A stretch of DNA of 64,000 nucleotides from IMGVR_UViG_3300049215_000771:124001-188000; one strand, 5' to 3'; shown: positions 16,650 through 57,476, numbered from the stretch's first letter. Made by a program: numbers and translations. The notes: a model not told the origin generated them from the letters alone.

Positions 16650-17444
16650 ATGTACAAGAGCAGGTTCACGAAATTGAAACCCGTTTACCTTCCACCATTC
16701 AGCGGCACCAGGGTCTTGATGATGCCCTTCCTGCTCGAAGACATTGACTCTTTGCCTGATGCTCTTGCTCATTACAGACAAACTGTACAAGAGTTGGTTG
16801 CGATCTGCCCGCCATGTAGGTTGCGACTGTCTACAGATAAAAACAAGTACCGTAGCATTGATGCCCCGTGGAACAAGGAACCGCCACCCGAAGGTGTGGC
16901 ATACTTGACAATCGACGAGAAGGTTGTTGAAGAAGGAAAAACGCAACGCCAGCGTGGGCTGCATGTCGATGGAATTGGGGCTGATGGTCAGTTGGATACT
17001 GGTATTTGGGCCATTCACAGCTACAGGAATTTTGTTGCTTCTATGTGGCAGGAAGGCGCTCAAAAGTGGCAACACAGCGCTTCGGGTATCGGCGGGATGA
17101 TTACTGTTTCCAATCCGGCAGGTTGTCGGGCGTGGTACAAAGACTTTGAAGGAAAGATCGACAACAATGGCGATTGTGAAGCCCTGAGAGCTAAATTTCC
17201 TGAATCTGAATCTACTGTGTTCGAGGCTGGTGTGGCATACTGGTGTGGGGCGACCTGCGTTCACGAGTCCCTGCCAATGCAGGAAAACACACAAAGGACG
17301 TTCGTTCGTTTGTCAATGCCTTCAGATGCTCCTTGGCACGAAGGCTACACTCGTAATCCCAAAGGCATCAAGCCTACTGGCGTCATTATTCCTCGTGGCG
17401 CATGGGATCGGGTCAAAGAACCAGAGGTTATCTTGAAGGGGTAA
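16650..17444 (+). CDS. 2OG-Fe(II) oxygenase superfamily protein
   Basis: GLHVDG (HxD), CVHESLP (distal His), RTFVRLS (2OG-binding Arg); internal KYRSIDAPW peptide. Confidence 0.75.
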   Translation: MYKSRFTKLKPVYLPPFSGTRVLMMPFLLEDIDSLPDALAHYRQTVQELVAICPPCRLRLSTDKNKYRSIDAPWNKEPPPEGVAYLTIDEKVVEEGKTQRQRGLHVDGIGADGQLDTGIWAIHSYRNFVASMWQEGAQKWQHSASGIGGMITVSNPAGCRAWYKDFEGKIDNNGDCEALRAKFPESESTVFEAGVAYWCGATCVHESLPMQENTQRTFVRLSMPSDAPWHEGYTRNPKGIKPTGVIIPRGAWDRVKEPEVILKG

Positions 17445-17445
17445 T

Positions 17446-17769
17446 ATGAAATACACGATACTACTTGTCTTGTCAGGATTGCTGTTCTTTGCCGGGTGCA
17501 AACAACAGCCACCAGCAGCGGACCAGCCACCCCCTGCTCAAGTTCCCCCGGTTGCGCCCCCGCCTCAGATGGATGCACCGCCAGCAATTCCACAAACACC
17601 ACCACCCCCACCGCCAGTGGTCACGAATTCCTACTTGAAGGGATACCACGATGGGTATTTCGGAACATGGCTACGGCCTGCTGCGTGGGTTGTTGTAGGT
17701 GAATACCGACATGGTTGGAGTGCCGGCTCGTATGACCGTCAGCACGGTCTGCCAAATGCACATCCTTAG
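17446..17769 (+). CDS. proline-rich lipoprotein
   Basis: Lipobox LFFAGC followed by poly-Pro region. Confidence 0.75.
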   Translation: MKYTILLVLSGLLFFAGCKQQPPAADQPPPAQVPPVAPPPQMDAPPAIPQTPPPPPPVVTNSYLKGYHDGYFGTWLRPAAWVVVGEYRHGWSAGSYDRQHGLPNAHP

Positions 17770-18458
17770 TATTTCTTGCTGTTTGTCGGCCCATTGTACT
17801 TTGATTTGCCCAACATATCGTCCATCGCACTAGCGAGGTATTCGGCGGTAAGTTGGGCAATATCTTTGTCGGCCCGCAGTTCGTGAATGATTTCAATTTG
17901 CATGGATTGCACAGAAGGGTCGGCATACCATTTCCGCCATAGCTGGTTCATGTTTTGCCTGGCCCAGCCACTCATCGCCCCGCCTTTCTTCCCTTCGTAC
18001 ACGTTGATGCCCGCCTCGCCGAGCAGATGAATGAAACATTCCTTCCTCCAGGTGTCGCAGGTGAAGGAATCAGGCGAGCCGGCTCCGAAACCAATTACCA
18101 TGTCGAGTTTGGAATCGCCGCATAAGGTGCGATGTTTGTTCGACATGCCATGAATCATGTACATATAGAGCAGGGTGTGGTTCTTGCGCAGGCGATTGCG
18201 AAAGCGAATGATCGGGTCCAGGAATTCATCTTTCACTACATCTTCGTGGCAGTGTTCCACATTGTTGCAATCAGCTTTGTCGTTGAAAACATCTACTTTG
18301 TCGGCACGTTCCCAGCCACGATTGATGACAGCATAACAGCCGAGTATGTTGGCAATAGCTTCGGCAACGATGGAGGTATTTTCATCGTCGCCATCGTGTC
18401 CGTGCGGGGCTACGATGATAATAGGTTTCTTGCCTTCAATGATGCTGACTCGTTCCAT
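17766..18458 (-). CDS. N-formylglutamate amidohydrolase-like / Zn-exopeptidase-fold protein
   Basis: IIIVAPHG...D..N...IHG spacing. Confidence 0.5.
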   Translation of the reverse strand: MERVSIIEGKKPIIIVAPHGHDGDDENTSIVAEAIANILGCYAVINRGWERADKVDVFNDKADCNNVEHCHEDVVKDEFLDPIIRFRNRLRKNHTLLYMYMIHGMSNKHRTLCGDSKLDMVIGFGAGSPDSFTCDTWRKECFIHLLGEAGINVYEGKKGGAMSGWARQNMNQLWRKWYADPSVQSMQIEIIHELRADKDIAQLTAEYLASAMDDMLGKSKYNGPTNSKKY

Positions 18459-18459
18459 G

Positions 18460-18651
18460 CTATTCCTTCTTCCCCTTCTCGAAGTCGTTGAAAACCTGTT
18501 TCACAATAGTAGAGCTTGTATCAACCAAACAATTCGGAAACACAGCATGAATGACGAGGGCGATGCCTGCCATCAAAAGTTTCATGGCGTTGCGTAGGGC
18601 GAATGCCATGTGTTGACGGTACGTCATCCGAACATCTTTCAAGTGGTCCAT
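18460..18651 (-). CDS. DUF6356-like small protein
   Basis: HL...TYRQHMAFA...IHAVFP...TSS. Confidence 0.6.
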   Translation of the reverse strand: MDHLKDVRMTYRQHMAFALRNAMKLLMAGIALVIHAVFPNCLVDTSSTIVKQVFNDFEKGKKE

Positions 18652-18878
18652 TATGCTCCTATTGCAACATGATGGTTGCCATCCCATGTTGTTTTTCCCC
18701 AGCATAGAAAATGCCATTTCAAACCAGCACCGGGCACTTCTTCTTCATGCGTAGTGCAGGGAATGCTGATATGAACTTGATGGGCGAGAGTTTCTATTCC
18801 ATTTTCCAGGACTCGCCATTTGCGTTTTAGTTCGTCTTCTTGCCATTTTGTGTTGAAGCGAATCAGAATCCTATTCAT
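18651..18878 (-). CDS. hypothetical protein
   Basis: Coupled ORF with SD. Confidence 0.7.
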   Translation of the reverse strand: MNRILIRFNTKWQEDELKRKWRVLENGIETLAHQVHISIPCTTHEEEVPGAGLKWHFLCWGKTTWDGNHHVAIGA

Positions 18879-18895
18879 GGTGCCCTTTCATTCTA

Positions 18896-19294
18896 TCAAT
18901 CAGCCTCGATATTGGTATCTCGGATTGGATGCAATACTTCAATGCCATGTTCTTGGCAGGAGCGATGGTGTTCTGGTTTGTCGTCGTAGTGAAGGGAAGC
19001 GCCGATATTCCACAACACTGGACCTTTTAGTTCATGGTTTGTGAAATGGCATTGTTTGATGGGAAGATCGTAGTCTTTGACGAAATCTTTGACACGCACC
19101 CGCCCCGGTTGATTTTTTTGAATCCAACCGGGAGTCTCGTGGGACTTATTGCGGGCGGTGACAATGTAGCATTTACACCCTTCAGCCGCATGTTTGCGAA
19201 CCACGTCAAGCATGGCGTGATTAGGGGTTCCATCATGGTTGCAAAGGGTGTTGTCGAAATCAAACGTCACAATACGTTGCTTTCTACCCATACC
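18896..19294 (-). CDS. HAD-superfamily hydrolase
   Basis: FDFDNTL, IVTAR, HYDD motifs. Confidence 0.85.
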   Translation of the reverse strand, partial: GMGRKQRIVTFDFDNTLCNHDGTPNHAMLDVVRKHAAEGCKCYIVTARNKSHETPGWIQKNQPGRVRVKDFVKDYDLPIKQCHFTNHELKGPVLWNIGASLHYDDKPEHHRSCQEHGIEVLHPIRDTNIEAD

Positions 19295-19298
19295 TTCC

Positions 19299-19757
19299 TC
19301 ATATTTGTGCTTTTGTAGCACCAACCCCTGCGGCCTCCCGCTCGCCCGAATGGTCGCCCAGGGCTGGCTTTATCAGATTGTAGTCAGTATCCATCAGTTC
19401 GGCCCGCTCGAACCAGTAATCTGGTACTTGCGGGTAGCCTGTTGCTTTTGCTTTCTCTTCAAACATTACCTGCGCAGGCGGGTGTCCGCCATGATACACA
19501 AGGTATTGAGCCGGGACTCCATGCCCCGGCAACTTCGCAATGAACTTCGAGAAGTTGCCGAACCGATTGAATGGCGGGTCATAAGGTGGCGGTCCCTCGA
19601 ATCGCATGTCGATAGCGCCAATAATACCATCCTTACATGGCAAACCAGGGACACGAATCATGCCACAGGGCACCGCAGCCTTCTCTTGTGGAGGCACAGA
19701 AAAACTCGCCATCTCTGCGAGAATCAACCATTCTCGAAAATTCATCGAAGTCTTCAT
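19299..19757 (-). CDS. putative virion internal protein with CTS-like N-terminus
   Basis: MKTSMNFREWLILAE; GTACATAC box 4 nt upstream, no SD. Confidence 0.6.
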   Translation of the reverse strand: MKTSMNFREWLILAEMASFSVPPQEKAAVPCGMIRVPGLPCKDGIIGAIDMRFEGPPPYDPPFNRFGNFSKFIAKLPGHGVPAQYLVYHGGHPPAQVMFEEKAKATGYPQVPDYWFERAELMDTDYNLIKPALGDHSGEREAAGVGATKAQI

Positions 19758-19839
19758 GTCGGTATGTACTGGTAATAGTTACAGAAAACCATCACCCTCT
19801 CTCTAAATAATGGACCTTACCCCTAATAACTGAGGCTTG

Positions 19840-20016
19840 ATGAAAAAAGATGTTCTCTCCATAGACCTGTCGAAAAAAACCCCGCAAGAAATAGCGGAGT
19901 TCCTGTCCGCCCTTCTATATGCCAAGCGCATATTGTTCCACCAGCATGGACTCAATATCCGCCTCCTCCCCAAGACCAGAAAAATATCTCTGAACAAGAG
20001 TACAGTAGAAAACTGA
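19840..20016 (+). CDS. small hypothetical protein (58 aa)
   Basis: Read by hand: MKKDVLSIDLSKKTPQEIAEFL...; GAGG SD; below the ORF-track cut-off. Confidence 0.5.
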   Translation: MKKDVLSIDLSKKTPQEIAEFLSALLYAKRILFHQHGLNIRLLPKTRKISLNKSTVEN

Positions 20017-20017
20017 C

Positions 20018-20046
20018 TTTACAACCTCAAACTATCGTGGTAAAAT
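20018..20046 (+). promoter_or_regulatory. sigma70-type promoter
   Basis: TTTACA-N17-TAAAAT with extended TG. Confidence 0.75.
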
Positions 20047-20176: not shown

Positions 20177-21322
20177 ATGGCACGAGTTGTCAACTACAGC
20201 CAGGGCGAGAAGCTGGAGCAGCAGATCGAACTCTCGCTCATCACGAAGTCCCACAACCCCCGGCACAGCCACCGGCACCTGCTGACCCTGTTTCACGAGA
20301 AGGGCAGCCACATTCACCCGCCCGAAGTCCGGGCCGAGTATATCCGAGAGATCGACGCCAACTTCCCGCATATCCGTCAGCGGGCCGAGAGTATCAAGAC
20401 GCTCGGTCAGCTTGAGGCCGTGACGCTTCGCTACTTCAACGCCAAGATCGCCGGCTCCGACGAATATACGCAGCGCTACGGCATCTGCCAGGGCGAATGC
20501 CGCACCCTCGCCTGGGCGCTTATCGAGGCCGAGACGGGCGAGCCGCAGACCGTTCGTGCCGTTATCGAGCGGCTGACGGTGGACCAGGCGTTCGAGCGGG
20601 CGCTGGCCGAGAATATCGAGCGTGAGGATATGTCGCCGAACGACCTGGCGGCATCCTTCAATGAGATGCTGACCGTCCGCATCAATCCCCGGACCACCGA
20701 CCCGACCCTGGAAGACGGCCAGCCCAACCCGTTGTACGATCCGGCCCACCCGAAGGGTCGTCCTTACACCCTGAAGGAAGTCGCCGAGAAGGTCAAGAAG
20801 GACTACCATTGGGTCCGCAGCCGGGCCAGCCTCGTCTACCTCCCGGAGAAGGACAAGGCGCAGATCGAGGCCGACCACCGGGCCGGCAAGCGTGACCTGA
20901 CCCGCTACTGCAAGAAGGCGGGCAAGCTGGCGACCCAACTCAAGGCCAAGGCCAAGGAAACCGGCCAGCCCGTCGAGGCTCTGCTTGAGCAGTGTGCCGC
21001 CCCGGAAAATTCCCCGGCTTCCGGGACGAATATCTCTGGACAAGCCGTTGCCGATCAGGTACAACCTGATATTCTGACTGTACAGCCAGAGCAGCGCCGG
21101 CGAGTCAAGAGCCTCAAGGAAGTCGTGGCGCTGTTCGACGCCACGTCCCTGGACAATTTGGCCCGACTCCAGGCGTTGGCCGAGGTCATGAACCTGGCTG
21201 ATGACCCTGCAACGTCGCTTCGACTTGCTTTGGATGAGCGAGAGAAGCGGGCAACGGAGGCCGAGCTTCGGTCTGGCCGGGAAGCCGACCGTGAAGCCCG
21301 CCGCAGTCAAAAGTCTGCCTGA
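20177..21322 (+). CDS. ParB-family protein (ParBc + HTH)
   Basis: NPR...SIKTLGQL...GECRTLA...ALAENIEREDMSP...TLKEVAEKVKKDYHWV. Confidence 0.8.
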   Translation: MARVVNYSQGEKLEQQIELSLITKSHNPRHSHRHLLTLFHEKGSHIHPPEVRAEYIREIDANFPHIRQRAESIKTLGQLEAVTLRYFNAKIAGSDEYTQRYGICQGECRTLAWALIEAETGEPQTVRAVIERLTVDQAFERALAENIEREDMSPNDLAASFNEMLTVRINPRTTDPTLEDGQPNPLYDPAHPKGRPYTLKEVAEKVKKDYHWVRSRASLVYLPEKDKAQIEADHRAGKRDLTRYCKKAGKLATQLKAKAKETGQPVEALLEQCAAPENSPASGTNISGQAVADQVQPDILTVQPEQRRRVKSLKEVVALFDATSLDNLARLQALAEVMNLADDPATSLRLALDEREKRATEAELRSGREADREARRSQKSA

Positions 21323-21327: not shown

Positions 21328-21372
21328 CGCCAACCACAGCGTATTCTTAGCGAACCTTCGCTGTGGTTGGCG
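21328..21372. repeat. 14-bp inverted repeat overlapping the sigma-gene promoter
   Basis: CGCCAACCACAGCG (21328-41) / CGCTGTGGTTGGCG (21359-72). Confidence 0.85.
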
Positions 21373-21378
21373 TGTCTT
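21352..21378 (+). promoter_or_regulatory. class-II promoter (GAACC-N17-GTCTT)
   Basis: Ten-copy motif, upstream of the sigma gene. Confidence 0.65.
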
Positions 21379-21440
21379 CTCAGCGAGGGCAGCAAACGTG
21401 CGTCGGAAAACCCTGTACGGGCCTGGTATGGAGTCTAGTT

Positions 21441-22442
21441 ATGACGGACACGGTTCCCTACATCAAGCTGACCAAGAAGGCTGAGGAGAAGTGCCTGGAC
21501 CTGTTGGTTCAGGCGAACGTGCTGCTCAAGAAGTGGGCGGAATGCTTCGGCGCTCGCAAAAGCCGAGAGTTTCGCAAGCTGTTGTTCAAGGGGCATCGAG
21601 ACAAGGCAGCGATGGCGGAAGTGGAGCAATCCATCCCGGTCACGCTACTCGACGAGTTCCGCCAGGAACGGCAGTTCATCATCGCCATTCACGTCACCAA
21701 GTACCCCGATCTCGACAACAGGACGGTCGAATTCGCCATGCTGTGTGGCTACAGCGGGCTGGGTCGCAAGCACGCCAAGCGCTGGTTCGCTCAGAACGGC
21801 GAAGGCAACGGCATGTCGCTGGATGACTACAAGAACGAGGCATACCTCGCCATCTTGGACAGCATCTACGGCTACACCGACCGTACCATCAGCTTCTCCA
21901 GCTTCGCCTGGGCCTCGCTGAAGAACCGGATGATCGCCTGCACCAACAAGTGCAACCTGTTGTGCCCGCTCACCAACCCCGACCTGGAGTTGCTGGCCCG
22001 GTACGAAGACACTCGGAAGACCTTCAACGATCACGTCACCTTCGATCAGGTGGTGGCGGCGATGGGTCTGGACGAGGAACAGTACAAGGCGCTCGGTGCC
22101 ATCATGACGAAGGTGTACGCCGAGTCGCAGATCGCCGTGGACCACACTGGCCACGACGACACGCCCAACGACTACACGTCGCTCCGCAGCGGCATCGACA
22201 ACGACGGCGAGGATCGCATCATTCGCCTCCAGGTCCGCCAGGCTATCGACGAGGCGGACCTGACCGACTTCGAGCGTATTGTGTTGGAAACTTCCATGAA
22301 TCCGTACTACGGATGGCAGTCGGACGTGGCCCGGAACAACATCAATCCGTCAACCAAGAAACCGTACACCCGCATGTGGGTCGGCCTGGCGCTCAAGAAC
22401 GCCCATGAGAAGGTTCGCCAGGCCATTCAGCGGGTCGCATGA
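21441..22442 (+). CDS. phage-encoded sigma70-family RNA polymerase sigma factor
   Basis: Region 2 (DDYKNEAYLAILDSIYGY...FSSFAWASLKNRM), region 3-like (TFDQVVAAMGL), region 4 (LTDFERIVLE...QSDVA...TRMWVGLALKNAHEKVR). Confidence 0.8.
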   Translation: MTDTVPYIKLTKKAEEKCLDLLVQANVLLKKWAECFGARKSREFRKLLFKGHRDKAAMAEVEQSIPVTLLDEFRQERQFIIAIHVTKYPDLDNRTVEFAMLCGYSGLGRKHAKRWFAQNGEGNGMSLDDYKNEAYLAILDSIYGYTDRTISFSSFAWASLKNRMIACTNKCNLLCPLTNPDLELLARYEDTRKTFNDHVTFDQVVAAMGLDEEQYKALGAIMTKVYAESQIAVDHTGHDDTPNDYTSLRSGIDNDGEDRIIRLQVRQAIDEADLTDFERIVLETSMNPYYGWQSDVARNNINPSTKKPYTRMWVGLALKNAHEKVRQAIQRVA

Positions 22443-22801: not shown

Positions 22802-22802
22802 C

Positions 22803-25444: not shown

Positions 25445-25645
25445 TTACCAGCCCTCCGGGTTGTCTTCGGCGTCAGGGTCTTCGTAAGCCCCGGAGACGG
25501 CTTCCCAGCCTGGCATCCGGGCCTCAGCCCAATTGCAGGCATAGATGAAACCCATCTCCGTGGGCAGGATGAAGGTAATCCAGCTATCCGTGGAAGCACG
25601 TTCCATCCGAAGGTAGCGGACCATGTACAATCGCTTGTTCTTCAT
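25445..25645 (-). CDS. hypothetical protein
   Basis: ATGA-coupled to the upstream minus-strand gene. Confidence 0.65.
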   Translation of the reverse strand: MKNKRLYMVRYLRMERASTDSWITFILPTEMGFIYACNWAEARMPGWEAVSGAYEDPDAEDNPEGW

Positions 25646-25944
25646 ACGTCGTCAATGCTCCTGTAGCGTCGGGTACGGCGAAGGCGGCGTTCTTCGTCTT
25701 GCTTCGCCCACTGTGCCAGCTTCCGGGTTTCAGCGGCTTTACGAGCCGCCTCACGGCGTTTCTTCGCCTTACGCTCACGGCGGCGATCTTCCTGATATTC
25801 CTTGTGGGTTTTTTCGAGTTCTTCCTTCCACTCGAATTCCATCAGGCTCATATCAGGGCCATCGTCGTACCCCTGATCGGCACTTTGTTCGAGAGGCGGG
25901 TCGTCATGATCGTCGTAGAACCAGTCGTCGCCCATGTCGTTCAT
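25642..25944 (-). CDS. acidic/basic bipartite protein ending RRYRSIDDV
   Basis: GGAGG SD; C-terminal YRSID tag. Confidence 0.7.
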   Translation of the reverse strand: MNDMGDDWFYDDHDDPPLEQSADQGYDDGPDMSLMEFEWKEELEKTHKEYQEDRRRERKAKKRREAARKAAETRKLAQWAKQDEERRLRRTRRYRSIDDV

Positions 25945-34596: not shown

Positions 34597-34890
34597 ATGG
34601 ACAAAACTTTGCTTGCGATTATTCAATGGGTGGGGATTGGTTTTTCTGGCTTGTTTGTTTACCTTTCCTTCAAAGCGGTAGCAAGAAGTCAGAAGTACCT
34701 TGCCGAATCGAAAGCCTCACTGGAGAAGATGAAGCAAATCAACAAAGAACTCAGCAACCTGAACGCTGGGATTTGTTGTAAATGTAAACTTCCCAAGGAA
34801 CTGGTTTGCAACGATTGCTTGGGCGTTGGCGAACCACAACCAGTACCACCCAAGTATCGTTCCATCGACGAACCGTGGGAGAAAAAATGA
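34597..34890 (+). CDS. membrane-anchored coiled-coil/Cys protein ending KYRSIDEPWEKK
   Basis: N-terminal TM, CCKC...CNDC, YRSID tag. Confidence 0.7.
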   Translation: MDKTLLAIIQWVGIGFSGLFVYLSFKAVARSQKYLAESKASLEKMKQINKELSNLNAGICCKCKLPKELVCNDCLGVGEPQPVPPKYRSIDEPWEKK

Positions 34891-36806: not shown

Positions 36807-37129
36807 TGAACAGTGCAATCATCGGTAAAGACCCCAACGGTCGATACTGGTTCAAGTCCGACCACGCCCTCACCGACATCACCGACGCCAAGGATTTCTA
36901 CGTTGAGCAGGAGGGTATCTGGCGATGGAAACGCTGGCGGCTTACTGCCGTGTTCGTCAAGCGAGAATCCTACTACCGTGATGCCGACAATCAGCGTGGG
37001 TATGTTCCCGCCATCGAGGAGCATGAAGTGTTGGGATATTACGACCGGCCCAACGCTGCAAGCATGGCCCTCGAACAACTCATGAGGATCAGGGAAATCC
37101 ACGAAATCGACCCCCTGACAGGCAAATGA
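36800..37129 (+). CDS. hypothetical protein
   Basis: ORF in operon. Confidence 0.7.
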   Translation: MLMNSAIIGKDPNGRYWFKSDHALTDITDAKDFYVEQEGIWRWKRWRLTAVFVKRESYYRDADNQRGYVPAIEEHEVLGYYDRPNAASMALEQLMRIREIHEIDPLTGK

Positions 37130-37368
37130 ATCAGCCATGCAACTTCGACCACAATGGCGAATGCCTGATTTGTGATTGCTGGATCGGTCAATGTGCTTGG
37201 GAGAGGTTGCTGAAAGCGGATTACACCTACGAGTCATATCGTGAACTATTGGAAATGTTCCAATATCATATGGCTCGTGCTGACATGCAACAACTTGTGG
37301 ATGCTCGTGACAATAAAGGCAATCCCAAGTTGTGGCGGTCAATAGATGCTGATTGGGACATGACATGA
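37126..37368 (+). CDS. hypothetical protein
   Basis: ATGA coupling. Confidence 0.65.
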   Translation: MNQPCNFDHNGECLICDCWIGQCAWERLLKADYTYESYRELLEMFQYHMARADMQQLVDARDNKGNPKLWRSIDADWDMT

Positions 37369-50402: not shown

Positions 50403-50428
50403 GAACCTTGCCTGGCCTGGACGGTCTT
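50403..50428 (+). promoter_or_regulatory. class-II promoter (GAACC-N16-GTCTT)
   Basis: Ten-copy motif, upstream of the helicase. Confidence 0.75.
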
Positions 50429-50476
50429 CATGGTGGAGATACGGATCACATAGGCTACGAGAGAAGGAAGCGATTC

Positions 50477-52792
50477 ATGGCTACCTCGAACAAGTTTGCT
50501 GGTCGCTGCAACAATCCCGCCTGCCCCCTGGGTAAGAACCGCTACAACGGCGTTGCTGTGGGCGAGGGCTACATCACCAAGATCAACGACAAGTGGGTAA
50601 CGTGGTGCAAGGAGTGTGTCCCCGTCCAGAAGAGCGCCGGCGAAGCCGAGCGCCGTGTCCTGACGGCGGACGGCAAGATTTTCACGCCCTACGAGCCGCA
50701 GAACCTTCCGCTCATCAAGTCCCTGAAGGGGCCGGGCGGCGTTTTCGGCCCCCGCTGGAACAAGGAAGGCAAGTTTTGGGAGATTTCTCTCGAACAGGCC
50801 GACCGCCAGCGCCTCCTCGAAGTCGCCGAGCGCCTCCGCTTGGAAGTCGCCCCGCAGCTTCGTGAGGGCAATCTCGTCACCGAACAGGCGCAGAACGCCA
50901 CCCACGCCGGCTTGTATCCGTTCCAGGTCGTCGGCGTCAACTGGATGGCGAAGCGCAAGAAGGCGCTCCTGGCCGACGAGATGGGTCTTGGCAAGACGAT
51001 CCAAGCGCTCATCAGCATCCCAGCCCACGGCAAGGCGCTGGTGGTCTGCCCGGCCACGCTGAAGCTGAACTGGCGTAACGAGGCGTCCGTCTGGCGTCCC
51101 GACCTGAAGGTTGTCGTCCTGAAGGGCGGCGATTCCTTCCGGTTCCCCCAGGCCGGCGAAATCGTCATCACCAACTACGACATCCTCGCCGACTACCTCG
51201 ACCCCACACCGAAGGTGAAGGGCGCTCGCAAGGCTCCCAAGATCACCTGGGAAGCGCTGAAGGCGTGGCGTGTCAAGCTGAAGGAACAACACCCGGAAGC
51301 TGAAGGCACGACCGTCATCTTCGACGAGGCACACAAGGTCAAGAACTACAAGACCGAGCGTAGCCGCAAGGTCCGGGAACTGTCCCGCCTCAGCAGCAGC
51401 GTTTGGGGTCTGACCGGCACGCCGCTCGACAACGAGCCGAGCGACTTGTACGGCGTCCTGGACAGCCTGGACATGGCGTTCGACGTGTTCACGCCCCGCA
51501 AGGGCCAGTCGTCGTTCCGTCGCTTCCAGGAGTTGTTCGCCGTGTCGGAAGATCGCTGGGGCGCTTGTCGCTACGGCACGCCCGACCCGATGGTTCCCGA
51601 ACTGCTCCGTCGTGTCATGCTCCGTCGCACCCGTGGCGAAGTCATGCCCGACCTGCCGACGAAGACCTACACCAACCTCATTGTTGGTGACATGCCGGAA
51701 CGCATTCGTCAGCAGCTTGACGAGATGTGGGAAAGCGACGGCACGGCGCTGGAAGTCGATGGTTCGCTGCCCCCGTTCGAGCGGTTCAGCGAAATCCGGG
51801 CGGCGCTGGCGAAGTCCAACATCCCGGCGATGTTGGAATACATCGAGGAACAGGAAGAACAGGGCGTCCCGCTCGTCGTGTTCTCCAGCCACCTGGCCCC
51901 GCTGGACGAACTGCTCGGTCGTCCGGGTTGGGCGGTGATTTCTGGCGACACGAAGCTGGAGAAGCGCCAGGAGATCGTCGATGCTTTCCAGGCCGGACAC
52001 CTGAAGGGCATCGCCCTCACCATCCGTGCTGGTGGTGTTGGTTTGACCTTGACCCACGCCTGGAAGGTGCTGTTCGTGGACCTGGATTGGGTTCCGGGTT
52101 GGAACAGCCAGGCCGAGGATCGTGTTTGCCGTATCGGGCAGACTTCCAACAAGGTCGAGATCGTCCGCATGGTGAACGATCACCCGCTCACCCTGCATAT
52201 TCTCAACATCCTGGCCGAGAAGACCCGGCTGATTGAGAACGCCGTCATCAAGACGATGCCGGTCGCTGTCAGCGCTCCCGTCACCCCGTCGAAGGAAACC
52301 GAAACGGAGGAACAGTACCAGGCTCGCATGGCCCGCATCCAGCAGGCCCAGGAGGAACTGGAGAAGGCCAAGGCCGAATCCGATGCTTCCCAGGCCAAGG
52401 CCAAGGCCAAAAGCAAGGTGGACCTGATCCACAGCCGGGAGAAGGGTCGCAACCAGCGCCCGATCCTCCCGCTGACCGACAAGCGGGTTGCCGTGGTTCG
52501 GGAAGCCTTCAAGTTCATGCTGTCCGTTTGTGACGGAGCGCATCAGCGTGACGCCCAGGGTTTCAACAAGCCCGACGCCGTGATCGCCCACTACCTGCTC
52601 ACGGCGGGCCTGGAGACGCCGAAGGAAGTGGAAGCGGCCTACTACATGCTGGTCCGCTACCATCGCCAGTTGAGCAAGAGCTACCCGCTCCTGTTCAACG
52701 GTAGCCCGGAAGATCGGGCAGCCATCATCGCTGAGGCGCAGGCCGGCGAAGATTCGATCTACAGTATGGACCCGGATCGCCATACCATCTAA
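50477..52792 (+). CDS. SNF2/SWI2-family (HARP-like) helicase
   Basis: LLADEMGLGKT, IFDEAH, LTGTP, MLRRT, VVFS, GGVGLTL, QAEDRVCRIGQ. Confidence 0.95.
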   Translation: MATSNKFAGRCNNPACPLGKNRYNGVAVGEGYITKINDKWVTWCKECVPVQKSAGEAERRVLTADGKIFTPYEPQNLPLIKSLKGPGGVFGPRWNKEGKFWEISLEQADRQRLLEVAERLRLEVAPQLREGNLVTEQAQNATHAGLYPFQVVGVNWMAKRKKALLADEMGLGKTIQALISIPAHGKALVVCPATLKLNWRNEASVWRPDLKVVVLKGGDSFRFPQAGEIVITNYDILADYLDPTPKVKGARKAPKITWEALKAWRVKLKEQHPEAEGTTVIFDEAHKVKNYKTERSRKVRELSRLSSSVWGLTGTPLDNEPSDLYGVLDSLDMAFDVFTPRKGQSSFRRFQELFAVSEDRWGACRYGTPDPMVPELLRRVMLRRTRGEVMPDLPTKTYTNLIVGDMPERIRQQLDEMWESDGTALEVDGSLPPFERFSEIRAALAKSNIPAMLEYIEEQEEQGVPLVVFSSHLAPLDELLGRPGWAVISGDTKLEKRQEIVDAFQAGHLKGIALTIRAGGVGLTLTHAWKVLFVDLDWVPGWNSQAEDRVCRIGQTSNKVEIVRMVNDHPLTLHILNILAEKTRLIENAVIKTMPVAVSAPVTPSKETETEEQYQARMARIQQAQEELEKAKAESDASQAKAKAKSKVDLIHSREKGRNQRPILPLTDKRVAVVREAFKFMLSVCDGAHQRDAQGFNKPDAVIAHYLLTAGLETPKEVEAAYYMLVRYHRQLSKSYPLLFNGSPEDRAAIIAEAQAGEDSIYSMDPDRHTI

Positions 52793-53854: not shown

Positions 53855-54136
53855 ATGAGCAAGGTAATTCTCAACAACGACGGCAGGCCGGATTCGATCA
53901 TCCCGAATTCGTACTACCCTCGTCTCCAGGTCAACGAGCGTGGTGAGATCGTGCTGGCAACGTACAAGCACGGCGTCCTCACCACTGGCATTCTCGTCGG
54001 CAAGCTGCCCCATTGCCAGTCGCCGTTCGAGATCGGCAAGAAGTTCAGCGATTGGGAAGTCGGCGGCGAGTTGAAAGACTACGACGGCGAAGTGACCATC
54101 ACGCTGACCAACAAGGTGAAGGGAAAATGGTCATGA
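53855..54136 (+). CDS. hypothetical protein
   Basis: ORF directly after promoter. Confidence 0.7.
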   Translation: MSKVILNNDGRPDSIIPNSYYPRLQVNERGEIVLATYKHGVLTTGILVGKLPHCQSPFEIGKKFSDWEVGGELKDYDGEVTITLTNKVKGKWS

Positions 54137-54327
54137 CGCCAGAACAAGTCGCCGACCTGCAATGGCTTGTTGGGATGGCTTTCAGCGCCTATCCCGGCAT
54201 GTACAAGAAGGGCGATGGCAAGCGGTTCGACCGCATCCAGGAACTCTTCAACGAGTTGAGCAACGGCCAGTACCAACGTGTTCCGTCCCGGTTCGAGCAA
54301 CGCAGGCGTAAGGAAGTCCAGTCGTGA
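54127..54327 (+). CDS. hypothetical protein
   Basis: AAGGG SD. Confidence 0.65.
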   Translation: MVMTPEQVADLQWLVGMAFSAYPGMYKKGDGKRFDRIQELFNELSNGQYQRVPSRFEQRRRKEVQS

Positions 54328-54833
54328 CCAAGAAGAAAAACCCTTCCGAACTCAAGCGACGTGGCGACATCGCTGGCGGCTACTACACCTACGCCGAGGC
54401 GAAGGTCATCGTCCAAGGTCTTGGCATTCGTGGCATCGCCGCCTACCGTGAGTACACTCGCCAGGAGGGGCGTGACGCCAAGTTGCCCACCGACCCCGCT
54501 CGCACCTACAAGGACGAGTTTGAGGGCTGGCCTGCCTTCTGTGGCAAAACGGCCCACGCCGGCCTGTCTGTTGACAAGTACGCCACGTTCATTGAGGCGA
54601 GCGAGGCGGCGCAGCGGCTCGGTATTACCGACAAGGCCGACTACGAAGCACGGCATCACCTGGACCCGAAGCTGCCGGCTGTTCCTTCACGCATCTACCC
54701 GGACTGGCCCGCCGACAAGCCCTGGTTCAAGTTCCTGGGCAAGTTGGTTCAGTACACCACGCTGGCCCAGGCGTCGGAATGGAGATCGACGCAGCCGGCC
54801 AGGTCATCGAATATGTCGATAACAAGCCGGTGA
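54324..54833 (+). CDS. integrase-repeat-unit-like repeat protein, third repeat truncated
   Basis: Two copies of Y.T..EA....Q.LGI.....Y.......D.KLP..P.R.Y..W....F.G; the third breaks after TTLAQASE. Confidence 0.6.
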   Translation: MTKKKNPSELKRRGDIAGGYYTYAEAKVIVQGLGIRGIAAYREYTRQEGRDAKLPTDPARTYKDEFEGWPAFCGKTAHAGLSVDKYATFIEASEAAQRLGITDKADYEARHHLDPKLPAVPSRIYPDWPADKPWFKFLGKLVQYTTLAQASEWRSTQPARSSNMSITSR

Positions 54834-54899
54834 TTCACCAGCTTCAGGAGTACGTCATTCCATGCCTCAAATGACCGATGCCTTCATTTGCCATGATTA

Positions 54900-55088
54900 T
54901 TGTGGCTTGATACGCTCGTTTGCCAGGGGTGGATGGGCCAGCGGGATTGGGACAAGGCCCAGCTTGAATACTTCAGGAAATACCCCGGCCTCGTTGTCTA
55001 CAAATGCCCCACTGGTCCCTACCGTCGCACCGAGGAAACCTTCGGCACGACGGAGGAAATTTGCCAACGCCTGGAAGCGAGGTTGTGA
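54900..55088 (+). CDS. hypothetical protein (start unclear, possible frameshift from ATG 54871)
   Basis: Plausible C-terminal portion; no SD at TTG. Confidence 0.4.
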   Translation: MWLDTLVCQGWMGQRDWDKAQLEYFRKYPGLVVYKCPTGPYRRTEETFGTTEEICQRLEARL

Positions 55089-55288
55089 TGTTCAACTGGT
55101 TCTGGAAGCTGTTCAGGAAGAAGCCCAAGACATTGGTTTTGCTTTGCATCAGACAGTGTGATACTTTCTGGTGGCCCCCGCACCTTGACGAGAAGGTGTC
55201 GGGGTACTGCGATGAGTGTGGGGGAGCAATCTTCTACGAGAAGAAGAACGCTTTCTTCCCTCGCAAGATATGCAATAGGTGTGGTTGA
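55088..55288 (+). CDS. zinc-ribbon protein
   Basis: CDEC...CNRC; TGATG coupling. Confidence 0.6.
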   Translation: MFNWFWKLFRKKPKTLVLLCIRQCDTFWWPPHLDEKVSGYCDECGGAIFYEKKNAFFPRKICNRCG

Positions 55289-55650
55289 TGATTCACGAAG
55301 AAAAAAAGATCACGATCTCGATGTCCCCTGAAGTGTATCGTGACCTTCGGAACATTGCCATCATTCGCTACATGACCGGGGCGATGGCGAATAGCGTTGG
55401 CGATGAGTTTCTGGTCAAATTGCTTCGTGTTATGGACAAGGGCGAGCAGGAATTCGTTTTTCGCTACAAAGACCCCAATTACGACGCATCCCTTCCTGAT
55501 GGGAAGGGCATCTCGATGAAGAAGGACAACACCGATGGGCAAACCCAAGGTGATCCAGTCAAGGTGGAAATTGAAGAAGTCTCCCGACCCGAAACCGATT
55601 GTTGCCCGCTTCCTGGACGATCTGGTGAAGCGAGCGGCGCAGTCGCCTGA
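55288..55650 (+). CDS. hypothetical protein
   Basis: TGATG coupling; tail overlaps the next ORF. Confidence 0.6.
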   Translation: MIHEEKKITISMSPEVYRDLRNIAIIRYMTGAMANSVGDEFLVKLLRVMDKGEQEFVFRYKDPNYDASLPDGKGISMKKDNTDGQTQGDPVKVEIEEVSRPETDCCPLPGRSGEASGAVA

Positions 55651-55813
55651 AGATGTTCCCAACGTCTACCGTGACGTGTGCCTGGCGCTGCTTGAGTCGC
55701 TGGGACCGGGAGGCATGAAGAAGGCGATTTGTGATTTGGCTCAGTTGTATAAGCAGGACGTGCCAGAAATCAAACTGCCCGGCTGGGAGAAGGACGACGA
55801 GATTCCGTTCTAG
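55535..55813 (+). CDS. small protein ending in an SSB-Ct-like DDEIPF
   Basis: AAGG SD; C-terminus WEKDDEIPF. Confidence 0.65.
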   Translation: MGKPKVIQSRWKLKKSPDPKPIVARFLDDLVKRAAQSPEDVPNVYRDVCLALLESLGPGGMKKAICDLAQLYKQDVPEIKLPGWEKDDEIPF

Positions 55814-55842
55814 TTTACAAATCGCCCCACCTGTGGTATTAT
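55814..55842 (+). promoter_or_regulatory. sigma70-type promoter
   Basis: TTTACA-N17-TATTAT with extended TG. Confidence 0.8.
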
Positions 55843-55861
55843 CCGAGCAACGGAGACGAAC

Positions 55862-56251
55862 ATGGTTATGCCTGAGTTTCTGGAAGAAGCCTTGTTGAAG
55901 ACCCTGGCCGACCGGATGAAGGTTCAGGCCCACGAACACCCTTGCGACCCTCGACAGGTTGCTGCGGCAATGATGGAAGGAAAAATTCTTCCCTTCCCCG
56001 ACAACCTGAAGGGATTCATCGTCCTGGATGACGTGAAACATCAACTTCAGTTCAGCCATGATAGGCTTTCGGAAGGCAAGACGCTGATTCATCTTTCGTG
56101 TGCCAGGGAAGATCAGGCAGCAGTGACCGATAGCGTGAAGAACAAGCTAATTGCTGCGTTTTTTGGTGGCGAAGAAACTTTCGAGTTCCCTGGCAACGAA
56201 ATGATCGCCAGGCAATACGTCACACATATTGCTGCACTTAGGGTGGAGTAG
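55862..56251 (+). CDS. hypothetical protein
   Basis: GGAG SD. Confidence 0.7.
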   Translation: MVMPEFLEEALLKTLADRMKVQAHEHPCDPRQVAAAMMEGKILPFPDNLKGFIVLDDVKHQLQFSHDRLSEGKTLIHLSCAREDQAAVTDSVKNKLIAAFFGGEETFEFPGNEMIARQYVTHIAALRVE

Positions 56252-56253
56252 TC

Positions 56254-56889
56254 GTGAACAAGCAACTGTTTGGCGGCAATCCGAAGTCAACTCATGAACT
56301 CTCCCAGGAATACCACACCTGGGTTGAGGAAACCGCAAAGAAAATCGTCCGTTCCTACGGAGAGGACACTGCCTGGGAGAAAATACCGGACCTGGAAAAA
56401 AAAGCCCAGCAGGAAGCTGAGTGGAGTAGCTGGGTCGTTTCGGCCTCCCGGCGCAACTTCGCCTGGCATTGTGCTTGCCACGCCGTCAATCCAAACCACA
56501 CAATGGGCGGCATTCGTCCGACCGCAACCACGGCGACCATTGCCATTGCCAAGCATGTTGTTCAGCGTGCCCATGAGTTGTACGAGAAGGTGAAGTGTTC
56601 ATTGTTCCGTCTTCGCTTCAAGCTGAATCAGCGTTTCCTGACCATCAGTGATGTTGATCCCAGGAGCGACGATGAAACGACGACATACCAGGCAACTGAC
56701 CGCCGCCAGGCCATGACCACCGTAAGCGATTTCTACCAGTCGTATCTCAAAATGCAGATCGACCCGCCCGTAATCGAACTGGTGGGCTACGACGACCAGC
56801 ATCGCATCCTGGAGGAAGCGGCGATTAGCTGCTCCATTTGCAACATTCAACTGCCAAAGGTTGGCATCAAGTCCGAGTATCAACAATGA
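56254..56889 (+). CDS. hypothetical protein
   Basis: GTG with GGAG SD. Confidence 0.7.
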   Translation: MNKQLFGGNPKSTHELSQEYHTWVEETAKKIVRSYGEDTAWEKIPDLEKKAQQEAEWSSWVVSASRRNFAWHCACHAVNPNHTMGGIRPTATTATIAIAKHVVQRAHELYEKVKCSLFRLRFKLNQRFLTISDVDPRSDDETTTYQATDRRQAMTTVSDFYQSYLKMQIDPPVIELVGYDDQHRILEEAAISCSICNIQLPKVGIKSEYQQ

Positions 56890-57476
56890 ACACTTACCAA
56901 CAAAGTGTGTGGGATAATTATCGGAAGAAGCGAACCCTCCGTACCAGGTTGAGGCATTTTGCTTTCCAAACCATTGTCCTGGCAATCGCTGCCGGGCTTT
57001 ATTTCAACGTGTTGTTTGACTTCGCCTGGTGGTTGACGGTGCTTTACAACATCTGGAACTGGTTCGGTTTGTTTTGTGTCACCGGATTCTGGATTGCCAT
57101 AGTCGTCATCAAGGACGAATATCTGAAAACTCAACAGATTTCGCCCAAGCAGCAAAGCGCAATGGATACCGGCCTGGAGGCCGCTATCTCGGCTTATTCC
57201 AACAAATTCTTCATGGTCTACGACATCGCCACTGACTGGTGTTTGTTCGGCGCTTTGTACCATGCCGGATATACGACGTTCGCAACATTCCAAGGCATAT
57301 GCCTCCTTGGGCAATACGGCGTGATGTATGGCATGAAGCAGACGGCGAGGGAATATATTTCCAGCCTGAAACCAGTTGCAGGCCAGCCCGTTCCTGGCAG
57401 TAACGGTGATGACGACGGCGAAGAACAACAACCACAGGGAAAGAAACCAAAATACAGGTCGATTGACGACCAGTGA
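56886..57476 (+). CDS. membrane protein ending KKPKYRSIDDQ
   Basis: 3-4 TM helices; YRSID tag. Confidence 0.75.
   Translation: MNTYQQSVWDNYRKKRTLRTRLRHFAFQTIVLAIAAGLYFNVLFDFAWWLTVLYNIWNWFGLFCVTGFWIAIVVIKDEYLKTQQISPKQQSAMDTGLEAAISAYSNKFFMVYDIATDWCLFGALYHAGYTTFATFQGICLLGQYGVMYGMKQTAREYISSLKPVAGQPVPGSNGDDDGEEQQPQGKKPKYRSIDDQ

What the first reader, a model, noticed from the sequence alone, without database searches (positions are those of the whole stretch)
16845..57476. A portable peptide tag, (K/R)YRSID(D/E/A)[PW], shared by four unrelated proteins
The pentapeptide YRSID occurs in four non-homologous ORFs: inside the 2OG-Fe(II) oxygenase (KNKYRSIDAPWNK, 16845-16871), at the C-terminus of ORF 25642-25944 (RRYRSIDDV*, minus strand, 25651-25665), at the C-terminus of membrane-anchored ORF 34597-34890 (PPKYRSIDEPWEKK*, 34852-34878) and at the C-terminus of membrane protein 56886-57476 (KKPKYRSIDDQ*, 57450-57476). 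The DNA differs at synonymous positions (TAC CGT AGC ATT GAT / TAC AGG AGC ATT GAC / TAT CGT TCC ATC GAC / TAC AGG TCG ATT GAC), so selection appears to act on the peptide, not on a DNA repeat. Each copy follows a basic residue and sits in a tail or low-complexity linker, like a short linear motif. My rough estimate with typical residue frequencies gives about 0.01 expected copies of a given 5-mer in the roughly 19,000 codons here. Inference: a phage-wide address label, for example a docking site for a phage hub protein or compartment, a degron, or a Tyr/Ser phosphorylation site. I know of no described system with this motif.
Basis: partly seen in the sequence, partly recalled or inferred. Interest (0 to 1): 0.9.

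Follow-up and report, generated by a model that had tools for sequence, protein, structure and literature searches.

The report
Portable peptide tag in huge phages
A clade of huge T4-like soil phages adds the same eight-residue peptide (usually YRSIDDPW after a run of lysines) to dozens of unrelated proteins, including small genes that copy pieces of the phage's own capsid protein. This points to an undescribed protein-addressing system whose reader is still unknown.

Summary
YRSID occurs at the four stated places. A fifth, variant copy (WRSIDADW) ends ORF 37126-37368. The window is part of a 532-kb viral contig (a 673-kb scaffold exists elsewhere). I saw 19 copies in about 135 kb of that genome. 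The exact octapeptide occurs in 2.9 million viral contigs only in this T4-like clade, whose genomes range from GC 36% to 58%.

The consensus is a Lys run, then [Y/F/W/H]-R-[S/T]-I-D-[D/A]-x-W, then about 3 residues and a stop. Selection acts on the peptide:
- Codons vary freely (Ser AGC versus TCN; six Arg codons).
- Flanking DNA is not conserved.
- Orthologs at 38-79% identity keep the tag while their linkers diverge.
- The copy in the oxygenase-like protein lies in a 24-residue loop insertion absent from 120 homologs.

Unexpectedly, at least seven carriers are minigenes. Each holds a 25-70-residue copy of a conserved segment of the phage's own major capsid protein, prohead protease or gp32-like protein, kept under purifying selection and fused to the tag. 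An intact capsid gene is also present.

My best reading is a docking motif read in trans by one shared partner (confidence about 0.45). The rivals are a degron or cleavage site, a capsid-targeting peptide and a ribosome-arrest peptide. No published description was found. Interest is high.

The parts
16650..17444 (+). Carrier 1: 264-aa Fe(II)/2OG-oxygenase-like protein (phrog_8970 family)
   Evidence: PHROG hit at 4e-36 and no Pfam hit. HxD...H...R is conserved in alignments A1 and A2. The AF2 model has pLDDT 81.5, and its weak Foldseek hits are all 2OG oxygenases.
16806..16877 (+). 24-residue in-frame insertion carrying the tag (tag K-YRSIDAPW at 16845-16871)
   Evidence: The insertion is absent from all 120 database homologs and from 5 cultured-phage homologs. 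It falls in the lower-confidence stretch of the AF2 model (10-residue block means 58-68 for residues 51-80), which has almost no regular secondary structure.
25642..25944 (-). Carrier 2: 100-aa acidic/basic protein ending RR-YRSIDD-V-stop (tag 25645-25668; TGA stop at the position of the Trp codon)
   Evidence: The ortholog in relative L113 ends in YYRSIDDKWENQ-stop, so this copy is a truncated form of the tag.
34597..34890 (+). Carrier 3: 97-aa protein with one N-terminal membrane helix and a Cys-rich stretch; tag K-YRSIDEPW at 34852-34878, tail EKK, and a TGA stop that overlaps the ATG of the next gene
   Evidence: Ortholog P0124 (79% identity) keeps KYRSIDEPWENK.
37126..37368 (+). Carrier 5 (new; not in the finding): 80-aa Cys-rich protein ending KL-WRSIDADW-DMT-stop (tag 37333-37356), with ATGA overlaps to both neighbouring genes
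56886..57476 (+). Carrier 4: 196-aa membrane protein (at least 2 hydrophobic helices) with an acidic tail ending K-YRSIDD-Q-stop (tag 57450-57473)
   Evidence: The 38%-identical homolog P0126 ends in KK-YRSIDD-A-stop after a completely different linker. More distant homologs (23-28% identity) lack the tag.

Best explanation
The tag is a short linear motif. Its core is aromatic-R-[S/T]-I-D-[D/A]-x-W, usually preceded by a Lys run and usually placed a few residues before the stop codon. It has been appended to, or inserted into loops of, dozens of non-homologous proteins in a clade of T4-like huge phages, and it is maintained by selection on the peptide.

I think it works as a docking handle that one common partner reads in trans. 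That partner would be either encoded by the phage or a very conserved host machine. The Y, I and W positions (i, i+3, i+7) could form one hydrophobic face of a short helix, flanked by the R/D/D charges and the Lys run.

The carriers fall into three kinds:
- Membrane-anchored proteins with the tag on a tail.
- An enzyme with the tag in a surface loop.
- 'Bait plus handle' minigenes, in which a conserved 25-70-residue segment of the phage's own major capsid protein, prohead protease or gp32-like protein is fused to the tag.

I therefore infer that the handle brings these proteins, and whatever binds the baits, to one shared place or fate.

Shown: the existence of the motif, its portability, peptide-level selection, clade restriction, and the bait-like carriers. 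Inferred: that it is read in trans, the helix geometry, and the recruitment logic.
For: Portability:
- With the tag masked, carriers within the genome share no detectable similarity.
- The tag occurs at C-termini, near an N-terminus (L006), in mid-protein (L015, L033) and in an enzyme loop (window 16806-16877). Position independence in flexible regions is typical of docking motifs.

Peptide-level selection:
- Ser is AGC/AGT in 15 copies and TCN in 13, and six Arg codons are used.
- DNA information content is confined to codon positions 1-2 of the Lys run and the eight tag codons. Nothing is conserved upstream or downstream.

Conservation:
- P0124 (79% identity), P0002 (78%), P0126 (38%) and family B across at least 8 contigs keep the tag while the linkers change completely.
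- The exact octapeptide also occurs in a GC-36% member of the clade (L016).

Clade restriction:
- The DNA patterns for KYRSID[ADE]PW and YRSIDDPW match only this clade in the viral collection.
- They also match 3 MAG contigs and 2 soil metagenome contigs. Four of these five carry syntenic genes. The fifth (L028) is a non-YRSID match.

Bait-like carriers:
- L011 copies capsid protein residues 55-102 (42/48 identical).
- L018 copies residues 237-310.
- L005 ORF1 copies residues 318-368.
- L017 (family B) copies residues 414-448.
- L005 ORF3 copies residues 438-463.
- L013 copies prohead protease residues 44-166.
- L006 carries a gp32-like piece.
- An intact 478-aa capsid gene coexists with them.
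- The capsid pieces are old and constrained: synonymous differences 0.75-0.97 per site against non-synonymous 0.13-0.32.
Against: - No reader has been identified.
- Eight contiguous, nearly invariant residues is stricter than most docking motifs. That degree of strictness looks more like a protease site or a ribosome-tunnel element.
- The tag stays identical across phages of very different GC content, which presumably infect different hosts. A co-evolving phage reader would be expected to let the motif drift.
- About 80% of copies lie 1-10 residues from the stop, most often with 3 residues after the W. A pure docking motif does not require that.
- Truncated copies that lack the Trp are stably kept (P0126 compared with the window protein), so the proposed Y-I-W face cannot be essential in every copy.
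- The tag Ile codon is ATT in 64% of copies against 31% genome-wide, and the first Asp codon is GAC in 86% against 60%. Some RNA-level or ancestry signal therefore remains.
Confidence: 0.45

Rival explanations
1. Processing site or degron. A protease or an AAA+ protease adaptor recognises the octapeptide and either clips the tail (exposing a ...R-S-I-D-D carboxy-terminus) or destroys the carrier. This would give timed removal or activation of many proteins at once.
For: - A contiguous 8-residue specificity is typical of viral processing proteases.
- Natural copies end right at or one residue after DD: WRTIDD-stop, YRSIDDA-stop, YRSIDDQ/V/P-stop and HRSIDDE-stop. These look like pre-clipped forms.
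- Two papain-like C39-family peptidase genes lie within a few kb downstream of the most widely conserved tagged gene (family B) in six loci from five distinct contigs (L008/L031, L029, L030, L056, L026, L027).
- A degron suits soluble and membrane carriers alike.
Against: - Relative L060 has two tagged capsid pieces but no C39-like gene in the same module.
- C39 peptidases are known for Gly-Gly leader cleavage, which the tag lacks (established knowledge).
- Clipping 3 residues from a tail has no obvious purpose.
- A cut in the oxygenase loop would nick the enzyme.
- No processing data exist.
Confidence: 0.2
2. Capsid-targeting peptide. This would be a C-terminal counterpart of the T4 capsid targeting sequence. 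It would bind the scaffolding core or the inner capsid surface, so that tagged proteins are loaded into proheads or tether prohead assembly to the membrane.
For: - The phage has a T4-type head module: Gp23-family capsid protein at E = 1.6e-87, an S77 prohead protease and a scaffold-like gene.
- In T4, a 10-residue portable peptide loads unrelated proteins into heads, and C-terminal propeptides exist on gp21 and Alt (PMC9026906).
- Several carriers derive from head proteins.
Against: - Polytopic membrane proteins and an oxygenase loop are odd cargo.
- A prohead-protease site (Leu/Ile-x-Glu) lies between cargo and tag in only a few copies.
- The authentic protease, scaffold and capsid genes carry no tag.
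- The tag sits at the opposite terminus to the T4 sequence and shares no sequence with it.
Confidence: 0.13
3. Nascent-chain element acting inside the ribosome. The peptide slows elongation or termination a few codons before the stop. That would tune coupling to the next gene or hold the nascent chain for co-translational events, in the way SecM, MifM and VemP do.
For: - Most copies leave about 3 residues between the W and the stop. From memory, known arrest peptides sit at a similar distance.
- The stop is TGA in 19 of 23 C-terminal copies against 56% genome-wide.
- Seven copies have an ATGA stop-start overlap with the next gene. In some of these the P-W-E codons (CCG TGG GAG G) form a Shine-Dalgarno sequence about 7 nt before the next ATG.
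- A universal reader such as the ribosome would explain why the motif is invariant across phages of GC 36-58%.
- Two carriers have N-terminal membrane helices, as the known force-sensing arrest peptides do.
Against: - At least five copies are internal or N-terminal.
- A close downstream gene is no more frequent than at ordinary junctions: 14 of 23 against 64%. Some tags face a convergent gene or a gap of 100-200 nt.
- The length of low-complexity sequence upstream of the tag ranges from 0 to 43 residues by a crude composition rule, so it does not match a fixed tunnel length.
- Truncated copies end with different stop codons.
Confidence: 0.12
4. Translated DNA or RNA repeat. The peptide would be a by-product of a mobile or regulatory nucleotide element (a repeat, a recombination site or a promoter) at gene ends.
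For: There is residual codon bias (ATT-GAC, giving TTGAC) and an SD-like TGGGAG inside the tag.
Against: - Third codon positions and both flanks carry almost no information.
- Ser switches between AGY and TCN codons.
- No -10 element lies at promoter spacing.
- The same peptide is encoded in genomes of GC 36% to 58%.
Confidence: 0.02

Closest known systems
T4 capsid targeting sequence (N-terminal propeptide of internal proteins IPI-III)
   Same: A roughly 10-residue portable peptide in a T4-type phage, shared by otherwise unrelated proteins. It is sufficient to address foreign proteins, and it is thought to let T4-like phages recruit varied cargo (PMC9026906).
   Different: The T4 sequence is N-terminal and is removed by the prohead protease at Leu/Ile-x-Glu. 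Its sequence is unrelated and its cargo is soluble. Here the tag is mostly C-terminal, also occurs in loops and on membrane proteins, and no cleavage or packaging has been shown.
Hub-binding tail peptides of bacterial and phage replication proteins (sliding-clamp-binding motifs, the acidic SSB C-terminal tip)
   Same: One short peptide on many unrelated proteins, read by a single hub. Those peptides also have an acidic-plus-aromatic character and often basic residues upstream (established knowledge; recalled, not tested).
   Different: Those motifs sit on replication and repair enzymes, and for SSB and T4 at the extreme C-terminus. Here the DnaB- and PolA-like genes next to a tag array are untagged, and the carriers are capsid pieces, membrane proteins and small proteins of unknown function.
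Encapsulin cargo-loading peptides
   Same: A conserved C-terminal peptide after a flexible linker on unrelated cargo proteins, which binds the inside of an HK97-fold shell (established knowledge).
   Different: The consensus is different (Gly/Leu-rich), it lies at the very end of the protein, and the cargo genes sit next to the shell gene. Here tagged genes are scattered over more than 500 kb.
Regulatory ribosome-arrest peptides (SecM, MifM, VemP)
   Same: Selection acts on the peptide, the motif lies a few codons before the stop, a gene follows closely, and some carriers have N-terminal membrane segments (established knowledge).
   Different: Known arrest peptides are single dedicated leader ORFs upstream of one regulated gene. 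Here dozens of carriers, internal copies and enzyme loops carry the motif.
T4 alt.-1/alt.-2 and the Gol region of gp23
   Same: T4 itself keeps small ORFs annotated as an old duplication of the first part of gene alt, with a new stop and start (record note). A short, highly conserved gp23 segment (Gol) is active as a free peptide, binds EF-Tu and is sensed by the Lit protease (PMC3014915). The L011 minigene copies the equivalent region, which maps to T4 gp23 residues 87-134. The exact Gol residue numbers are from memory.
   Different: The T4 fragments carry no common tag, and no function is known for them. Here at least five capsid-derived minigenes are conserved, under purifying selection, and all tagged.

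Membership tests
Fe(II)/2-oxoglutarate oxygenase (carrier 16650-17444) | HxD/E...H iron-binding triad | tested here: met
   H105, D107 and H205 are invariant in alignments of 6 and 62 homologs.
Fe(II)/2-oxoglutarate oxygenase (carrier 16650-17444) | Basic residue after the distal His that binds 2OG | tested here: met
   R216 is invariant in A1 and at least 90% conserved in A2. R220 is also conserved.
Fe(II)/2-oxoglutarate oxygenase (carrier 16650-17444) | Double-stranded beta-helix fold or a match to a family profile | tested here: inconclusive
   No Pfam hit. The Foldseek top hits are nearly all 2OG oxygenases, but the best E-value is 4.5e-3 and TM-scores are 0.25-0.31.
T4-type capsid targeting sequence | N-terminal propeptide followed by a prohead-protease site (Leu/Ile-x-Glu) | tested here: not met
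   The tag is C-terminal or internal. Only the 34597 copy reads I-D-E, and the others read I-D-D or I-D-A.
T4-type capsid targeting sequence | Carriers end up inside the capsid | not testable with these tools
   This needs virion proteomics or packaging assays.
Ribosome-arrest peptide | Peptide-level conservation close to the end of the ORF | tested here: met
   About 80% of copies are within 10 residues of the stop, most often with 3 residues after the W. Synonymous codons vary freely.
Ribosome-arrest peptide | Dedicated leader ORF whose stall controls a closely coupled downstream gene | tested here: not met
   The next start lies within 15 nt in 14 of 23 cases, against 64% of ordinary junctions. 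Some tags precede convergent genes or gaps over 100 nt, and five copies are internal.
Ribosome-arrest peptide | Demonstrated stalling | not testable with these tools
   This needs toeprinting or ribosome profiling.
Extreme C-terminal degron (ssrA type) | Motif ends at the free carboxy-terminus | tested here: not met
   One to 10 residues follow the core in most copies, and several copies are internal. Only WRTIDD-stop ends exactly at the core.
Clamp- or SSB-type hub-binding peptide | Carried by replication and repair enzymes | tested here: not met
   Among the carriers seen, only the gp32-like piece is replication-related. The DnaB_C and DNA_pol_A genes beside the L005 tag array are untagged.
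Repeated DNA element (REP, MITE or attC-like) | Conservation at the nucleotide level, including silent sites and flanks | tested here: not met
   Information content is confined to codon positions 1-2 of about 11 codons, Ser switches between AGY and TCN, and the flanks are random.

The most novel reading that the evidence does not exclude
The tag is the universal handle of a phage-encoded 'bait and handle' system. The minigenes express mimic peptides of the most conserved, and therefore most immune-visible, segments of the phage's own capsid protein (including the Gol-equivalent region), prohead protease and single-strand-binding protein. The shared handle delivers whatever binds these baits, for example host sensors that detect those proteins, to one phage-controlled reader for sequestration or destruction. 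This would be a programmable decoy or targeted-degradation form of anti-defence.
Probability: 0.1. Interest if true: 0.95.

Novelty: new variant of a known kind. Interest (0 to 1): 0.82.

Why it matters
Portable address peptides are rare and useful in phage biology. The T4 capsid targeting sequence became a packaging and delivery tool, and clamp-binding peptides define whole interaction networks.

Here one nearly invariant octapeptide marks dozens of otherwise unannotatable proteins in some of the largest known phage genomes. Finding its single reader would assign a shared function or fate to all of them at once.

The tagged copies of capsid, protease and gp32-like segments are, as far as I could find, undescribed. 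They suggest that phages deploy fragments of their own conserved proteins for assembly control, for competition or for countering host sensors.

The tag is short, transferable and easy to test on reporters, so the open question is directly approachable.

Tried and rejected
- Megablast of 20 kb of the window against GenBank phages found nothing.
- Full-text search for the peptide strings returned 0 papers. Searches on phage linear motifs and capsid-fragment decoys found nothing relevant.
- A region-restricted protein search with a tagged tail returned only the protein itself and one ortholog, because too few words were shared.
- Promoter idea (TTGAC inside the tag): no -10 element lies at the right spacing.
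- Split capsid gene, trans-splicing or intein idea: rejected, because an intact 478-aa capsid gene sits in the same contig.
- Recent pseudogene debris: rejected, because synonymous sites are saturated while non-synonymous change is low and the pieces are conserved across contigs.
- Fixed linker length matching the ribosome tunnel: not supported (0-43 residues).
- C39 peptidase as an obligatory partner: co-occurs with family B in six loci (five distinct contigs) but is missing next to the tagged pieces of L060.
- AlphaFold model of the capsid protein, intended for mapping the pieces: failed (pLDDT 42.5).
I redid it with database homologs.
- Resemblances recalled from memory (Y-x-x-x-D/E secretion signals, tyrosine-based sorting signals, phospho-mimic binding sites) were not tested. 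I gave them no weight, because the invariant R, S and I are not explained by those loose patterns.

Full report
**1. Check of the observation**

A six-frame scan finds YRSID exactly four times, at the coordinates given.
- KNKYRSIDAPWNKE lies inside the 264-aa ORF 16650-17444.
- RRYRSIDDV-stop ends the minus-strand ORF 25642-25944.
- PPKYRSIDEPWEKK-stop ends ORF 34597-34890.
- KPKYRSIDDQ-stop ends ORF 56886-57476.

A crude codon-usage gene model (120 genes, 18,868 residues) accepts all four ORFs, including the minus-strand one. In that proteome YRSID is the only 5-mer shared by four proteins. In 2000 shuffles that preserve each protein's composition, any 5-mer reached four proteins only 8 times. 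The expected count for this particular 5-mer is 0.005.

ORF 37126-37368 (80 aa) has ATGA overlaps to both neighbouring genes and ends in KLWRSIDADWDMT-stop. The pattern R[ST][ILV]D[DEA] hits the whole six-frame translation five times, and all five hits are these tags.

**2. Where the window comes from, and how widespread the tag is**

The window is positions 124,001-188,000 of IMG/VR contig IMGVR_UViG_3300049215_000771, which is 532,729 bp long. The same phage appears in a 673-kb ENA scaffold.

I back-translated the motif into DNA patterns and scanned 2.9 million viral contigs.
- KYRSID[ADE]PW gave 13 matches in four contigs, nine of them in this genome.
- YRSIDDPW with any preceding residue added more copies in this genome and one in a GC-36% contig. 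The only other matches were two identical non-YRSID sequences.
- The same pattern in 596 Gb of prokaryotic genomes hit only three MAG contigs. Two of them (labelled Acidobacteriaceae and Chloracidobacterium) carry genes syntenic with this phage.
- In JGI metagenomes it hit two soil contigs, again syntenic.

In the roughly 135 kb of this genome that I could read I count 19 copies. That sample is biased towards tags. The unbiased figures are 5 copies per 64 kb in the window and 3 per 18 kb in a related 76-kb contig.

The capsid protein is a Gp23-family protein (E = 1.6e-87). It has more than 350 close relatives among viral contigs (84-100% identity among the 80 listed), so the phage belongs to a large T4-like clade. 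The tag is frequent only in a sub-clade. It also occurs, in exact or variant form, in members with GC 36% and 46%.

**3. The motif**

Twenty-seven non-redundant copies give this picture:
- K is favoured at positions -1 to -4.
- Then come Y-R-S-I-D (fixed by how I searched), D (25/27), P (25/27) and W (23/27).
- E is preferred next (14 copies), and the stop most often comes three residues after the W.

Variants found by proximity or by looser patterns are FRSIDDPW, HRSIDDE-stop, YRTIDDW, YRSIDDEW, RRTIDDFW, YRSIDDKW, WRTIDD-stop, WRSIDADW and YRSVDADW. The core is therefore aromatic-R-[S/T]-I-D-[D/A]-x-W, and the residue before the W is free.

**4. The peptide, not the DNA, is conserved**

- Ser is AGC/AGT in 15 copies and TCN in 13. 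Arg uses six codons.
- Across 16 paralogous copies in this genome, information content is high only at codon positions 1-2 of the Lys run and the eight tag codons. It drops to noise immediately on both sides.
- A residual bias exists: Ile ATT 64% against 31% genome-wide, and the first Asp GAC 86% against 60%. I read this as shared ancestry or a weak RNA constraint. A promoter reading of TTGAC fails for lack of a -10 element.

**5. Conservation in orthologs**

- The 34597 protein has an ortholog at 79% identity that keeps KYRSIDEPWENK.
- The 56886 membrane protein has a 38%-identical homolog whose linker is unrelated but which ends in KKYRSIDDA-stop. Homologs at 23-28% identity lack the tag.
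- The minus-strand protein has an ortholog ending in YYRSIDDKWENQ-stop. The window copy therefore lost the Trp to a TGA codon.
- The short form also persists, as shown by P0126, so the core up to DD appears to be enough for retention.

**6. The oxygenase copy is an insertion**

The family (phrog_8970) has a conserved H-x-D...H...R signature and a weakly 2OG-oxygenase-like predicted fold. None of 5 cultured-phage homologs or 120 database homologs has the 24 residues CPPCRLRLSTDKNKYRSIDAPWNK (window 16806-16877). That includes homologs at 51-60% identity by BLASTP.

In the AlphaFold model, residues 51-80, which contain the insertion, have 10-residue block means of pLDDT 58-68 and almost no regular secondary structure.

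The motif is not a buried family feature.

**7. What the carriers are**

With the tag masked, carriers within the genome share no similarity. The only BLAST hits are between orthologs in different contigs.

Profile searches then gave the main surprise. Several small carriers are pieces of core T4-type proteins. Aligned to the intact 478-aa capsid protein of the same contig (L035:10001-11434), they map as follows:

| Carrier | Copies | Identity |
|---|---|---|
| L011 | capsid residues 55-102 | 42/48 identical |
| L018 | capsid residues 237-310 | 36/70 identical |
| L005 ORF1 | capsid residues 318-368 | 41/51 identical |
| L017 (family B) | capsid residues 414-448 | 21/35 identical |
| L005 ORF3 | capsid residues 438-463 | 18/26 identical |
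| L013 | prohead protease residues 44-166 | 39% identical |
| L006 | a gp32-like segment, with the tag near the N-terminus | weak profile hits only (PHROG E = 3.8e-5; Pfam gp32 below its cut-off) |

In most of them the copied segment starts within a few residues of the start codon, and a linker and the tag follow it. L005 ORF3 has 31 unrelated residues before the copied segment.

The pieces are scattered across the contig, at 18, 58, 238, 351, 454 and 518 kb.

They are not fresh debris. Against the resident capsid gene, synonymous differences are saturated (0.75-0.97 per site) while non-synonymous differences are 0.13-0.32.

They are also conserved as genes in relatives. Family B is present in at least 8 contigs. 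A GC-46% relative has two tagged capsid pieces with variant tags. In all the sequence I examined, every capsid-like small ORF carries the tag.

The L011 piece maps to T4 gp23 residues 87-134. This is the most conserved N-terminal region. In T4 that region contains the Gol peptide, which binds EF-Tu and triggers the Lit protease (PMC3014915). The exact Gol residue numbers are from memory.

**8. Context features**

- The stop codon after the tag is TGA in 19 of 23 C-terminal copies, against 56% genome-wide.
- Seven copies have ATGA overlaps with the next gene. In some of these the P-W-E codons form GGGAGG about 7 nt before the next start.
- A close downstream gene is no more frequent than at ordinary junctions (14/23 against 64%). 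Some tags precede gaps or convergent genes.
- The low-complexity stretch upstream of the tag ranges from 0 to 43 residues by a crude composition rule.
- Two papain-like C39-family peptidases lie within a few kb downstream of family B in six loci from five distinct contigs, but not in L060. An AbiEi_4-type winged-helix protein follows family B in those loci and also follows the tagged pieces of L060.

**9. Interpretation**

The portability, the tolerance of position and the flexible context all fit a short linear motif read in trans. So do the peptide-level selection and the loop insertion. I take that as the best explanation (confidence 0.45).

The bait-like carriers suggest an adaptor logic, in which a conserved binding segment is joined to a common handle.

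The rivals are a processing site or degron (0.2), a C-terminal analogue of the T4 capsid targeting sequence (0.13), a ribosome-tunnel element (0.12) and a translated nucleotide repeat (0.02). The evidence for and against each is in the Rival explanations section.

The strict contiguity of the motif and its invariance across very different GC contents are the strongest arguments against a simple phage-encoded docking partner. They keep the protease and ribosome readings alive.

**10. Novelty**

No paper in the searchable library contains the peptide. Searches on phage linear motifs and capsid-fragment decoys found no description of tagged capsid-fragment minigenes.

The logic (one portable peptide, many carriers) is known from the T4 capsid targeting sequence (PMC9026906), from clamp- and SSB-type hub peptides and from encapsulin cargo peptides. 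The defining features of each that I could test are not met, as the membership table shows.

I therefore file it as a new variant of a known kind, with high interest.

Noticed in passing
window 37126-37368 (+): Fifth, variant copy of the tag (KLWRSIDADWDMT-stop) on an 80-aa Cys-rich ORF with ATGA overlaps to both neighbours.
   Followed up: yes
window 8721-9587 (-): A minus-strand gene encodes a paralog (49.5% identity over 208 residues) of the scaffold-like protein that sits between the prohead protease and the capsid gene 200 kb away. This is a second scaffold-type gene outside the head module.
   Followed up: partly
window 13749-15044, 20177-21322, 21363-22442, 50408-52792 (+): Other annotatable genes in the window: an arginyl-tRNA-synthetase-like protein (tRNA-synt_1d plus DALR), a ParB-like protein, a weak sigma-factor-like protein, and an SNF2-family helicase. 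No tRNA genes were found in the window.
   Followed up: partly
L026 (CAVSYW010000005.1, 933-kb contig of an Acidobacteriaceae MAG); L027 (Chloracidobacterium MAG); L111 (673-kb ENA scaffold): Phage genes syntenic with this contig lie on contigs binned into Acidobacteria MAGs, and the same phage is assembled as 673 kb elsewhere. The true genome may exceed 532 kb. The binning gives a weak hint that the host is acidobacterial. The 933-kb contig could be a mis-binned phage, a chimera or an integrated copy.
   Followed up: no
L008:434-3743 (-), and the same module in L030, L056, L026, L027: A conserved module lies next to the tagged capsid piece (family B). It holds an AbiEi_4-type winged-helix protein, an acidic 127-aa protein and two paralogous standalone C39-like cysteine peptidases. 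These are possible readers or processors of the tag, but the peptidases are absent from the equivalent place in L060.
   Followed up: partly
L005:106-1073 = L111:9548-10515, plus L111:11143-11391: Tandem array of four overlapping small ORFs, each ending in the tag (the fourth has G in place of W), between a DnaB-like helicase and an HhH glycosylase-like gene. A fifth tagged ORF (YRTIDDW) follows the glycosylase-like gene. ORF1 and ORF3 contain capsid pieces.
   Followed up: partly
Tag-to-next-gene junctions, e.g. window 34873-34890, L005:781-798: The P-W-E codons (CCG TGG GAG G) double as a Shine-Dalgarno sequence for an ATG that overlaps the TGA stop. TGA follows the tag in 19 of 23 copies against 56% genome-wide. 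In three truncated copies of this genome the Trp codon position is TGA.
   Followed up: partly
L111:15379-17190: Macro-domain and bacterial-type PARG genes lie about 5 kb from the tag array, so the phage carries enzymes that reverse ADP-ribosylation. I did not test whether the invariant Arg/Ser of the tag is a modification site.
   Followed up: no
window 16806-16877 versus 34807-34887: The oxygenase insertion and the tail of the 34597 protein share a longer pattern (C-x-x-C, 10-12 residues, KYRSID-x-PW-x-K). They are the only two copies in the window whose position after D is not D. This suggests one was copied from a common source with the other.
   Followed up: no
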